Part shown: in pieces, positions 30,831-32,411 of the stretch
Position numbering within the stretch: position 1 is the stretch's first letter
Layout of the letters: every line of letters starts with the position of its first letter
Assembly (NCBI RefSeq): GCF_001194135.2
Contig: NC_068981.1
Coordinates: 196,746,763 to 196,780,567, forward strand
Direction: 5' to 3'
DNA: 33,805 bases
Source: Octopus bimaculoides
Lineage: Eukaryota
Program-made: the position numbers and the translations under genes
Notes under the pieces: model-generated
What the model saw: the letters and a program-made list of their open reading frames with translations, nothing else
Database searches by the model: none
What the model was told of the DNA's origin: nothing

Positions 30831-30873
30831 TCTTCATGTATTCTGCAGTTACTTATTTTATTCCGCTTCATTA

Positions 30874-32153
30874 CATTGGTCAACAAGTCCTTTTCATCAG
30901 ACATATGCCAAGGTATACTTAGTATAGTTTTTAATGCTGATTTCAAATATACAATTAGATTTTTGACATCAAGTACTGTTTTCAAGATGAGAAAGTTTTT
31001 TGGTTTTAGCTCATGCATTATATAGAAATTCCAATTAATGACGAGTATGCATGTATTTCATTTACATCATGGAAACGTACCTTTAAAATGAACTACATTA
31101 TTCATTGCTCCATAGTTCAGATGCAATATTTCGTCATCTTGAATTAACCAATCAAGTTTTGTCTGATGAAATAGATATTTCAGCATCTTAAATTGTCCAG
31201 TCAGAATTGGTCTGATGAAATATTTCATCAACTCAAATTCAATATAAATATAACCGTCTGTATCGATTTCTTTATTTGTTTTACAGTGTTAACAATGTCA
31301 AGACAGTGTAGAAATCGTCCTAATGTGTTATTTTGTTATGTCTGTGGACAGTTTATTGTGAAAGCTAAAAAAACGTAGAATAACACCAGAGATCAAGAAG
31401 ATTTCTAAGCTGTACTTTGACTGTCCTCTTGGAGATCAGGACAAGTTATGGACACCACATTTTATCTGCTCAGCTTGCTCAAATGGCTTGCGTGGCTGGT
31501 TCAATAATAATAATAAATCCATGCCTTTTGCCATTCCAATGATATGGAAGGAGCCGAAAGACCATTTTAATGACTGTTATTTTTGCAAAGTAAATGTCAC
31601 AGGATTTTCTATGAAGAATAAATACAAAATTGCGTTCACTTCTTGGACTCCCATCTGGATTTATTCGCAGATAACCTTGGAGCAGTGTCTAATGAAGATG
31701 GTGAAAGATTTCACAGGGCCGTTATTGCTATGGAGAAACAGCACCAAGGCTTCTGGAACGACAGTATGCTGGCTGACTACTGCTGGACACTTTACCATGA
31801 TCAACCAGATCAGGAACACCGCAGGAAATCCAAATCTCAATGTTTCTAACTTTGCTGTTCTAATCTTGTCTGTTTTGTCTGAACCATTTTCTGTGTTTTC
31901 ACTCTTTGTAGAATGATAGTGACGATTTTTAATTCAACAAACTCCTTTACTTTCTAAATATAAGATATCCTTATTTATAATGTTAATGATTTCATATACA
32001 CAAATATGTAAATATTTGCATGTATTTACTGAAAAAATTGATACGTGCTGCATACAAATGGAGTGAAATTTTGAAATGAGCATAAAAAATTAGTCTAAAA
32101 AACTTGGTTTGCATTCCTAATGAGTAAAATACATTCAATTTTGTTGACCGGTG
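30874..32153 (+). mobile_element. Internally deleted Chapaev3-like (CMC superfamily) DNA transposon
   Basis: TTA on both sides (30871-73 and 32154-56). TIRs CATTGGTCAACAA and TTGTTGACCGGTG are 11/13 identical. A subterminal inverted motif lies at 30928-47 and 32070-89. The element encloses transposase remnants. Confidence 0.82.
31295..31849 (+). pseudogene. Chapaev-like transposase remnant: N-terminal zinc-finger region joined to the extreme C-terminus
   Basis: MSRQCRNRPNVLFCYVCG, a +1 frameshift in an A7 run, then GDQDKLWTPHFICSACSNGLRGW…IWKEPKDHFNDCYFC; a junction at about 31633; then HFLDSHLDLFADNLGAVSNEDGERFH…QGFWNDSMLADYCW…*. An acceptor-like TTTGTTTTACAG ends at 31286, just upstream of the ATG. 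Confidence 0.8.
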
Positions 32154-32411
32154 TTATCAGTTTTAGTGGGATATCTTTGATCTTGGGTTTCAATAACAAA
32201 AATAAATAGCAAAACCTTTGAAGACAGTTCTGGCAAGAAGTTTCTACCGCATTTTAAGATTGCTTGGTTGATTTTTAGTGGTATGGCAAATGGTCTTAAT
32301 TCCAGACTGTACACAGCAATGATCTTACAGACATTTCTTTTCGGCAGCACATAGAGAATACTGGAACCACGAAACAGTCAACTCCATCAGGGATTATTGA
32401 AGTCAGAAAAA

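What the first reader, a model, noticed from the sequence alone, without database searches (positions are those of the whole stretch)
30871..32156. Complete-ended Chapaev3-like transposon keeping only its RAG1-N-terminus-like zinc-finger region and the C-terminal tip
Seen: TTA-[CATTGGTCAACAA…TTGTTGACCGGTG]-TTA, a subterminal inverted motif, and a transposase remnant in which a Cys/His-rich N-terminus (CxxCG…D…PHxxCxxC…W…HxxxCxxC) is joined at about 31633 to the GERFH…DYCW C-terminus. Established: Chapaev transposases carry an N-terminal zinc-finger motif related to the RAG1 N-terminal region; as I recall, the Chapaev3 group has CAC…GTG ends and 3-bp TWA TSDs and shows patchy, horizontally transferred distributions. 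Inference: this 1280-bp derivative lost the central catalytic core but kept both ends, so it could have been mobilised in trans. A spliced transcript (acceptor at 31286) could yield a small zinc-finger protein if intact sister copies exist.
Basis: partly seen in the sequence, partly recalled or inferred. Interest (0 to 1): 0.7.

Follow-up and report, generated by a model that had tools for sequence, protein, structure and literature searches.

The report
Internally deleted Chapaev3 DNA transposon copy
This is a dead, 1.28-kb leftover of a known kind of animal "cut-and-paste" jumping gene (Chapaev3) that kept both ends, its RAG1-like zinc-finger coding region and the tail of its enzyme gene but lost the catalytic middle; it is a clean example but an ordinary one.

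Summary

**The element.** Window 30874-32153 (1,280 bp) has 13-bp terminal inverted repeats matching at 11/13 positions. It is flanked by a TTA/TTA duplication that itself sits between A and T, which is the published Chapaev3 insertion signature.

**Coding remnant.**
- The 5' coding block (31295-31631) is a Chapaev3-type "Chapa" zinc finger. It matches the published Chapaev3 rows far better than Chapaev or RAG1 rows, and all eight presumed zinc ligands are kept.
- The 3' block (31634-31849) is the transposase tail, with H(4)H, GERFH and DYCW.
- Against Garfield_BM (556 aa), only aa 9-103 and 487-553 are matched.

**The deletion.** Two longer relatives from other public assemblies carry 1.06-1.27 kb exactly where the window has the junction (31634/31635, 2-bp microhomology). 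Their similarity to the window stops exactly at the proposed termini.

**Coding capacity.** The copy cannot encode anything useful. A +1 insertion in an A7 run stops the ATG frame after 27 codons, and the tail is out of frame with the zinc-finger block.

**RAG1 link.** A profile-profile test gave P about 7e-6 (0/60 shuffles reached this score).

**Not shown.** Trans-mobilisation, splicing, horizontal transfer and the host species. No second copy was found.

**Verdict.** A new member of a known kind; low interest.

The parts
30870..30873 (+). Left target-site duplication TTA (30871-30873), preceded by A (30870)
   Evidence: Matches the A|TWA...TWA|T rule reported for Chapaev3 (PMC4079192).
30874..30886 (+). 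5' terminal inverted repeat CATTGGTCAACAA. The terminus is CAT, one transition from the canonical CAC.
   Evidence: (I11). Similarity to relative L002 starts here.
30892..30901 (-). Subterminal motif TCTGATGAAA, inverted copy
   Evidence: The three exact copies in the window all lie inside the element. In one search L002 keeps the motif exactly at the 31162 copy and in diverged form at the other two positions.
30919..30947 (+). 5' arm of the subterminal inverted repeat (29 nt, 83% complementary to 32070-32098)
   Evidence: I1. Strongly conserved in L002. Function as a transposase binding site is inferred.
31126..31222 (+). Two adjacent ~48-nt direct repeats (79% identical), each ending in TCTGATGAAATA, upstream of the start codon
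   Evidence: (D4). Both units are present in L002.
31268..31286 (+). Polypyrimidine tract plus CAG (splice-acceptor-like) just upstream of the ATG
   Evidence: Conserved in L002 as TTGTTTTCCAG|TGTTAACAATG. Use as an acceptor is not shown.
31295..31631 (+). Chapa (RAG1-NZD-like) zinc-finger coding block, 112 codons after correcting one frameshift
   Evidence: Presumed ligands C5, C14, C17, C58, C61, H89, C93 and C96 are all present.
31367..31378 (+). A7 run carrying a +1 insertion relative to relatives, followed by the resulting TAG stop (31376-31378). The ATG frame ends after 27 codons.
31632..31636 (+). Internal-deletion junction (31634/31635) with 2-bp GT microhomology. About 1.06-1.27 kb (about 370 codons) is missing.
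31634..31849 (+). C-terminal transposase remnant: H(4)H motif HFLDSH (31637-31654), GERFH, DYCW and stop TAA (31847-31849). It is out of frame with the zinc-finger block.
   Evidence: Motif definition from PMC4079192.
32070..32098 (+). 3' arm of the subterminal inverted repeat
   Evidence: I1. Conserved in L001 and L002.
32141..32153 (+). 3' terminal inverted repeat TTGTTGACCGGTG, ending in the canonical GTG
   Evidence: L001 and L002 end with TTGTTGACCAGTG and TTGTTGGCCAGTG at the same aligned position.
32154..32157 (+). Right target-site duplication TTA (32154-32156), followed by T (32157)
   Evidence: L001 also ends ...GTG|TTA|T.

Best explanation
Window 30874-32153 is a non-autonomous, internally deleted and now decayed copy of a Chapaev3-group DNA transposon (CMC superfamily).

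Insertion. A DDE transposase of this group inserted the element, or its full-length parent of about 2.35-2.4 kb, into an A|TTA|T target by cut-and-paste. This duplicated TTA.

Deletion. About 1.06-1.27 kb was lost between codon ~112 and codon ~484. That stretch encodes the linker and the catalytic region: both aspartates and the C(2)C and LH motifs. The break has a 2-bp microhomology. That fits interrupted gap repair after an excision, or slippage (inferred).

What remains:
- Both termini and the conserved subterminal repeats. These are the presumed cis sites for transposase binding (inferred).
- The 5' leader.
- The last ~72 codons of the transposase.

Coding state. The copy encodes no functional protein. 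A +1 insertion in an A7 run stops the ATG frame after 27 codons, and the tail is out of frame with the zinc finger. It could move only if an autonomous relative supplied transposase.

Open point. Whether the deletion happened before the insertion (so the element transposed in its short form) or afterwards in place is not resolved.
For: Ends:
- TSD TTA/TTA between A and T, and a 13-bp TIR matching 11/13. The published rule for Chapaev3 is TWA between A and T with CAC...GTG ends.
- The two TIR mismatches are single transitions, one per end, relative to the CACTGG/CCAGTG seen in relatives.

Boundaries:
- L002 aligns to element positions 8-762 and 761-1280. L001 aligns to 458-762, 762-978 and 1147-1280.
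- Similarity starts and stops at the proposed termini, and the flanks are unrelated.

Coding:
- Garfield_BM aa 9-103 match 31302-31595 (E 5e-23), and aa 487-553 match 31634-31837 (E 2e-15). Nothing in between is matched.
- Against the 560-aa homologue P0068, the window keeps 5-112 and 484-554. It lacks the LFIDSS (252), CADFKV (307), CFLC (328) and PPLH (374) motifs.
- The N-block matches published Chapaev3 Chapa rows; Chapaev3-1_SM is best at 54/93 identical.

Deletion: relatives carry 1,064 bp (L002) or 1,274 bp (L001) at the junction, which shares GT.

Decay: the +1 insertion in the A-run and the TAG stop.

Family context:
- 3,997 representative proteins at E<=1e-3.
- Two-block (full-length) members listed are 504-721 aa, most of them 538-596 aa.
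- Several independent N+C deletion forms also exist.
- Internal-deletion derivatives of Chapaev3 are already described in silkworm and anole.
Against: - No Repbase, Dfam or CENSOR comparison was possible. Assignment rests on published alignments (one read from an OCR'd PDF), one published transposase and unnamed database homologues.
- Pfam has no model for either block.
- The 5' terminus is CAT, not CAC.
- Only one copy was seen, and the host genome was not available. Copy number, age and the existence of an autonomous partner in this genome are therefore unknown.
- No empty site was examined, so TTA as a true duplication is inferred from the family rule and from relatives' ends.
Confidence: 0.93

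Rival explanations
1. The element transposed in its short form. It would belong to a non-autonomous subfamily whose copies all share the 31634/31635 junction and were amplified in trans by an autonomous Chapaev3 element, as described for GarfieldN1_BM and ConanN1/N2_AC.
For: - Both termini, the TSD and the conserved subterminal repeats are intact.
- Deletion-derived non-autonomous Chapaev3 families are documented.
- Short N+C forms are common among database homologues: P0066, P0067, P0070, P0069, P0088, P0090, P0091.
Against: - No second copy exists in the 33.8-kb window.
- The window's ORFs spanning the junction are not in the 15-billion-protein collection.
- A junction 22-mer found only one unrelated chance match in metagenome contigs.
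- An in-place deletion leaves exactly the same structure.
- The one short form I followed up (P0213, loci L004-L007) was the same single locus in four samples, not several insertions.
Confidence: 0.4
2. The region is a host gene, or a domesticated or repressor-type gene, that produces a small Chapa zinc-finger protein. This could work through the splice acceptor at 31286, by analogy with KP-type truncated P-element proteins.
For: - The acceptor-like motif and the ATG context are conserved in relative L002.
- All eight presumed zinc ligands are retained.
- Intact in-frame N+C ORFs of 180-191 aa exist in other organisms.
Against: - In this copy the ATG frame ends after 27 codons at TAG 31376-31378, because of a +1 insertion.
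- The tail is out of frame with the zinc-finger block.
- The unit is bounded by TIRs and a TSD, like any insertion.
- No transcript data are available.
Confidence: 0.03
3. The terminal repeat and TTA pair are a coincidence. Either the true element has other boundaries, or the coding remnants belong to a different superfamily.
For: - A comparable TIR+TSD configuration arises by chance about 0.23 times per window.
- Pfam gives no family assignment.
Against: - Two independent relatives align up to, and not beyond, exactly these termini.
- The flanking A and T fit the family rule.
- The coding blocks match a published Chapaev3 transposase and Chapaev3 Chapa rows.
- The H(4)H motif diagnostic of the group is present.
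Confidence: 0.02

Closest known systems
Chapaev3 group of Chapaev/CMC DNA transposons, for example Garfield_BM (silkworm), Merrow_PM (lamprey) and Repbase Chapaev3-1_SM
   Same: - 3-bp TWA duplication between A and T.
- ...GTG 3' end.
- TIR core CAC(N)GGTCAACA, similar to the Garfield_BM end ...TGTTGACCCGTG shown in PMC4079192 fig. S2.
- N-terminal Chapa domain with the Chapaev3 signature CYVCG...GDQDK.W.PH..C..C...MPFA.P..W.EP.DH..DCYFC.
- C-terminal H(4)H...GERFH...DYCW...RKSKS tail.
- Inferred parental length of about 2.35-2.4 kb, against 2,289 bp for Garfield and 2,451 bp for Merrow.
   Different: - This copy lacks codons ~113-483, so it has no DDE aspartates, C(2)C or LH motifs.
- The 5' end is CAT.
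- Amino-acid identity to Garfield_BM is only ~45-47%, so it is a different family within the group. The closest published row is Chapaev3-1_SM.
- The zinc-finger block is not interrupted at the position corresponding to codon 78, where Merrow's first exon ends (Merrow and Garfield are two-exon genes).
GarfieldN1_BM and ConanN1/N2_AC: non-autonomous MITEs derived from Chapaev3 by internal deletion (Zhang et al. 2014)
   Same: Internal deletion derivative that keeps both ends of the parent.
   Different: Those are short (<600 bp), homogeneous, high-copy families with PCR-validated insertions. Here there is one 1,280-bp copy that still carries 184 codons of coding remnant, and no evidence of amplification.
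[quoted passage not shown]
   Same: - The ligand pattern is in register: C..CG / PH..C..C for ZFa, and one N-terminal ligand plus H...C..C for ZFb.
- This corresponds to the 'type I' scheme of the 2026 preprint.
- Profile-profile P about 7e-6 over 81 columns.
   Different: - The first ZFb ligand is Cys rather than His.
- It has no vertebrate H2 helix insert.
- It is attached to a Chapaev3 core rather than a Transib/RAG core.
- No solved NZD was available in the structure library to confirm the fold.
KP-type internally deleted P elements (functional analogy only; from general knowledge)
   Same: An internal deletion that retains the N-terminal zinc-finger DNA-binding region and removes the catalytic part.
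   Different: KP is in frame and makes a repressor protein. This copy is frameshifted and cannot. The superfamily and the zinc finger (THAP) are unrelated.

Membership tests
Chapaev3 (CMC superfamily) | 3-bp target-site duplication of consensus TWA | tested here: met
   TTA at 30871-30873 and 32154-32156. Definition from PMC4079192. No empty site was examined.
Chapaev3 (CMC superfamily) | Insertion between A (5') and T (3') adjacent to the duplication | tested here: met
   30870 = A and 32157 = T. Relative L001 also ends GTG|TTA|T.
Chapaev3 (CMC superfamily) | Termini 5'-CAC ... GTG-3' | tested here: inconclusive
   The 3' end is GTG. The 5' end is CAT, one C>T transition from CAC. Relatives' 3' ends read CCAGTG, that is CACTGG on the other strand. 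This is most simply a post-insertion mutation.
Chapaev3 (CMC superfamily) | N-terminal Chapa zinc-finger domain of the Chapaev3 type | tested here: met
   Local alignment to ten published Chapaev3 rows: eight score 189-287, the other two 111 and 35. Chapaev and RAG1 rows score <=57. Garfield_BM aa 9-103 match at E 5e-23.
Chapaev3 (CMC superfamily) | DDE catalytic core with C(2)C, LH and H(4)H motifs | tested here: not met
   Only H(4)H (HFLDSH, 31637-31654) survives. The region holding the aspartates, C(2)C and LH is deleted. Homologues P0030 and P0068 carry CFLC, PPLH and HFL.SH. The absence is by deletion, which is what makes this a non-autonomous derivative rather than a non-member.
Chapaev3 (CMC superfamily) | Phylogenetic placement of the transposase inside the Chapaev3 clade; Repbase/Dfam best hit | not testable with these tools
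   No Repbase or Dfam library was available. Only pairwise scores were obtained.
RAG1 NZD / Chapa zinc-finger fold | Detectable profile similarity to RAG1/RAG1L N-terminal zinc-finger domains | tested here: met
   A 163-sequence Chapaev3 profile was compared by hhalign with RAG1+RAG1L rows transcribed from Additional file 5 of PMC4411706. Result: probability 84%, P 7.4e-6, 81 columns. With Chapaev rows added: 90%, P 1.4e-6. None of 60 column-shuffled controls reached the score; their maximum was 21.4 against 34.5. A shallow 24-sequence profile gave only 8-60%.
RAG1 NZD / Chapa zinc-finger fold | Two interdigitated zinc sites (ZFa, ZFb) with eight conserved ligands | tested here: inconclusive
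   The eight ligand positions are present in the sequence. The AlphaFold2 model is confident only for residues ~11-80 (pLDDT 67-86 per 10-residue block) and poor for the ZFb C-terminal part. Foldseek against the PDB found nothing significant. The only fold-like match was the ZAD of Grauzone (1pzw, TM 0.50, E 1.9). That agrees with the reported ZFa-ZAD resemblance, but no solved NZD was in the library.
Amplified non-autonomous (MITE-like) subfamily | Several copies at different sites sharing the same deletion junction | not testable with these tools
   The host genome is not available. There is no other copy in the window, no exact protein in the collection, and the junction 22-mer gave only a chance hit.

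The most novel reading that the evidence does not exclude
Short 'zinc finger plus tail' derivatives of Chapaev3 may be a recurrent and sometimes functional product rather than random debris. In this reading, deletions would repeatedly fall between the A-rich ...KNK.KI(V) codons after the Chapa domain and the ...SLK(I/V)HF codons before H(4)H. In-frame versions (for example the 180-aa P0066/P0213 and the 191-aa P0067) would make a DNA-binding-only protein that competes with the transposase, as KP does for P elements. The window's copy would be a decayed member of such a class.
Probability: 0.08. Interest if true: 0.45.

Novelty: new member of a known kind. Interest (0 to 1): 0.15.

Why it matters
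Chapaev3 elements matter mainly for two reasons. [quoted passage not shown] This copy adds a clearly delimited example with conserved subterminal repeats. Those repeats could guide a search for the transposase binding sites. The copy also shows that the Chapa coding block survives in deletion derivatives. It does not change what is known: the family, its insertion signature, its deletion derivatives and its RAG1 link are all published. Its practical value is for repeat annotation of the (unidentified) host genome.

Tried and rejected
- **Pfam scan of both peptide blocks:** no family.
- **Sequence search of the PDB:** nothing relevant, either with the N-block or with a 24-sequence profile. No RAG1 NZD entry matched the profile in that copy.
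- **AlphaFold2 plus Foldseek against the PDB:** no significant hit. There was only a weak ZAD resemblance.
- **Junction-specific 22-mer against metagenome contigs:** one hit (L003). Reading it showed no similarity beyond the 22 bases, and about one such hit is expected by chance at that database size (my own rough estimate).
- **Scan of viral contigs (IMG/VR) for relatives:** none.
- **Exact look-up of the window's junction-spanning ORFs in the 15-billion-protein collection:** absent.
- **Host identification:** a LINE reverse-transcriptase fragment from the window returned only unnamed ENA/Logan proteins at <=67% identity. Rfam and tRNA scans were empty. The host stays unidentified. My impression from the (TA)n/(CA)n-rich draft sequence that it might be a cephalopod is only a guess.
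- **An error of my own, corrected:** I first read two tandem copies into L001. The file actually held both L001 and L002, and redid the analysis per locus.
- **The short in-frame form P0213:** loci L004-L007 proved to be one locus in four sequencing runs. They are therefore not evidence for amplification.
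Full report
**1. What is in the sequence**

The window is a draft eukaryotic assembly: 12 runs of N and abundant microsatellites.

At the reported place the sequence reads A-TTA-CATTGGTCAACAA ... TTGTTGACCGGTG-TTA-T. The element proper is 30874-32153 (1,280 bp).
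- The terminal inverted repeat matches at 11 of 13 positions (I11).
- A 29-nt subterminal inverted repeat lies 46 and 55 bp inside the two ends (30919-30947 and 32070-32098, 83% complementary, I1).
- The motif TCTGATGAAA occurs three times exactly, and only inside the element. Two of these copies end a pair of ~48-nt direct repeats at 31126-31222 (D4).

**2. Is it more than chance?**

A TWA + CA...TG + >=11/13 inverted repeat + identical TWA turns up about 0.23 times per window in Markov-1 simulations. The ends alone would therefore not convince.

Two independent relatives make them solid.
- L002 is a TARA Oceans metagenome scaffold. It aligns to element positions 8-762 and 761-1280 at 70-73% identity.
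- L001 is a 982-kb contig of ENA assembly ERZ25067570. It aligns to 458-762, 762-978 and 1147-1280 at 75-82%.

In base-level alignments, similarity begins at the left terminus and stops at ...TTGTTG(A/G)CC(A/G)GTG, after which the flanks are unrelated. L001 also ends GTG|TTA|T. L002 is flanked by ATTA on the left and CTA-T on the right.

The relatives read CCAGTG at the 3' end. The window's two TIR mismatches are therefore most simply one transition at each end of an originally perfect CACTGGTCAACAA repeat.

**3. The coding remnant**

From ATG 31295 the frame reads MSRQCRNRPNVLFCYVCGQFIVKAKKT and then stops at TAG (31376-31378). Shifting by one base continues the block as RRITPEIKKISKLYFDCPLGDQDKLWTPHFICSACSNGLRGWFNNNNKSMPFAIPMIWKEPKDHFNDCYFCKVNVTGFSMKNKYKI, ending at 31631.

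Alignment with L001 and L002 shows that the window has one extra base in an A7 run (31367-31373). It also has an in-frame 3-bp insertion.

From 31634, in a third frame relationship, the sequence reads VHFLDSHLDLFADNLGAVSNEDGERFHRAVIAMEKQHQGFWNDSMLADYCWTLYHDQPDQEHRRKSKSQCF*, with the stop at 31847-31849. The tail is out of frame with the zinc-finger block. This copy therefore cannot make either a transposase or a small zinc-finger protein.

**4. What family**

Pfam has no model for either block. The literature supplies the definition. Zhang et al. 2014 (PMC4079192) report the following for Chapaev3:
- CAC...GTG ends;
- a 3-bp TWA duplication that always lies between A and T;
- transposase motifs C(2)C, LH and H(4)H;
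- repeated horizontal transfer;
- MITEs that are direct internal-deletion derivatives.

Their supplement prints the 556-aa Garfield_BM transposase. tblastn of that protein against the window hits aa 9-103 (31302-31595, 45% identity, E 5e-23) and aa 487-553 (31634-31837, 47%, E 2e-15), and nothing in between.

Kapitonov and Koonin 2015 (PMC4411706) state that the Chapa domain is present in Chapaev3. Their Additional file 5 aligns Chapaev3 rows with Chapaev, RAG1L and RAG1.
- The window's N-block aligns to eight of the ten Chapaev3 rows with raw scores of 189-287; the other two score 111 and 35. The best row is Chapaev3-1_SM, with 54/93 identical.
- It scores <=57 against Chapaev, RAG1L and RAG1 rows.

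The tail contains H(4)H (HFLDSH). In the 560-aa homologue P0068, the window corresponds to residues 5-112 and 484-554. It lacks the stretch with LFIDSS (252), CADFKV (307), CFLC (328) and PPLH (374).

All testable Chapaev3 features are met, with two exceptions. The catalytic core is absent by deletion, and the 5' CAC now reads CAT.

**5. The deletion**

Where the window reads ...AAAATTGCG|TTCACTTC..., L002 carries 1,064 bp and L001 carries 1,274 bp.
- The parental left side reads ...AAAATTGTGT|ATTC.
- The right side reads ...CTGAAA|GTTCA (L002) or ...CTGAAAA|TTCAC (L001).
- The junction therefore shares about 2 bp, GT.

The parent would have been about 2.35-2.4 kb, like L002's 2,378-bp element, Garfield (2,289 bp) and Merrow (2,451 bp).

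Microhomology at the junction fits interrupted gap repair after excision, or slippage. This is inference. An in-place deletion and transposition of an already short element leave the same structure, and I could not tell them apart. There is no other copy in the window. The junction-spanning ORFs are not in the protein collection. A junction 22-mer gave only a chance hit.

**6. Family context**

A search of 1.84 billion representative proteins with the joined blocks found 3,997 relatives at E<=1e-3 and 1,355 at E<=1e-10.
- Full-length, two-block members are mostly 538-596 aa.
- Named hits come from aphids, moths, spiders, a pseudoscorpion and a tunicate.

Several database proteins are independent internal-deletion forms with intact frames: P0066, P0067, P0070, P0069, P0088, P0090, P0091. 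Their left breakpoints lie at P0068 residues ~104-192 and their right breakpoints at ~420-493. The query itself favours such forms, so their frequency is not informative.

The one I followed (P0213) is a single locus seen in four sequencing runs.

**7. The RAG1 link**

A 2026 preprint (10.64898/2026.01.24.700457) reports the following:
- an NZD-like Chapa domain in Chapaev transposases;
- a local resemblance of the first zinc site to the ZAD fold.

My own tests gave these results.
- A shallow 24-sequence profile was weak against the published RAG1/RAG1L/Chapaev rows (probability 8-60%).
- A 163-sequence Chapaev3 profile gave probability 84% and P 7.4e-6 over 81 columns against RAG1+RAG1L rows alone. 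With Chapaev rows added it gave 90% and P 1.4e-6.
- In these alignments C..CG, PH..C..C and the C-terminal H...C..C are all in register.
- None of 60 column-shuffled controls came near: maximum score 21.4 against 34.5.
- The template rows were transcribed from an OCR'd PDF, which should weaken rather than inflate the match.
- The AlphaFold2 model was confident only for the first zinc-site region.
- Foldseek against the PDB found nothing significant. The only fold-like match was the Grauzone ZAD (1pzw, TM 0.50). No solved NZD was in that library.

The ligand pattern in the window is C5 + H89/C93/C96 and C14/C17 + C58/C61. This corresponds to the preprint's 'type I' scheme, with Cys in place of the N-terminal His (inference from the pattern).

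**8.

- The acceptor-like TTTGTTTTACAG at 31275-31286 and the ATG context are conserved in L002. This is compatible with a 5'-UTR intron, but equally with any conserved leader. Merrow and Garfield have a two-exon transposase gene whose intron lies inside the coding region. The window's block is uninterrupted at the position corresponding to Merrow's exon boundary (codon 78).
- Horizontal transfer cannot be judged. Neither the host of the window nor the taxa of L001 and L002 are known.

**9. Verdict**

The feature is real and correctly interpreted. It is an ordinary fossil of a described transposon group. It is a new member of a known kind, of low interest beyond repeat annotation. One small extra value: the conserved subterminal repeats are candidate binding sites for a Chapa-domain transposase.

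Noticed in passing
window 17251-17455 and 17466-17670; 20266-20355 and 21513-21602: Pairs of 100% identical segments lie directly on either side of N gaps (a 10-N gap at 17456-17465 and a 954-N gap at 20559-21512). They look like assembly or scaffolding duplications rather than biology.
   Followed up: no
window 14729-15361 (-): LINE reverse-transcriptase fragment ending in a poly-Lys/A-rich stretch. Homologues carry Pfam PF00078. The best database relatives are only 67% identical and unnamed, so it did not identify the host.
   Followed up: partly
window 25748-26380 (-) and 4712-5362 (+): ORFs resembling the C-terminal, Cys/His-containing tails of non-LTR retrotransposon ORF2 proteins. The first is fused in frame to a translated microsatellite (LSIY repeats). 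The assignment is by eye only.
   Followed up: no
window 769-926, 15355-15489, 24396-24568 (-), 24665-24832; also 13448-13612, 15591-15759, 23983-24195: Two dispersed short repeats of ~120-170 bp, 77-87% identical between copies, SINE-like in size. No tRNA or Rfam match was found.
   Followed up: partly
window 30242-30620: A long (TGGT)n/(TGGC)n microsatellite lies about 250 bp upstream of the element. It gives long spurious ORFs on both strands.
   Followed up: no
window 32431-32678: An imperfect tandem duplication of ~82 bp (72% identity) lies about 280 bp downstream of the element.
   Followed up: no
L004 475-1017 (same locus as L005-L007; Logan runs SRR32318032/33/57/58): An intact 180-aa ORF (P0213/P0066) joins a Chapa domain in frame to the H(4)H-GERFH tail. 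Its breakpoints lie within a few codons of the window's. It is conserved at 99.5-99.9% nucleotide identity in four sequencing runs. It could be an expressed truncated-transposase gene or just a young deletion copy. The taxon is unknown.
   Followed up: partly
L002 1755-4132 and L001 ~3875-6263: These are longer relatives of the window's element at 70-82% nucleotide identity: a near full-length one in a TARA Oceans metagenome scaffold (L002) and one lacking a recognisable 5' end in an unidentified ENA assembly (L001). Both have frameshifted transposase genes. The TARA hit suggests that the family lives in a marine animal.
   Followed up: partly
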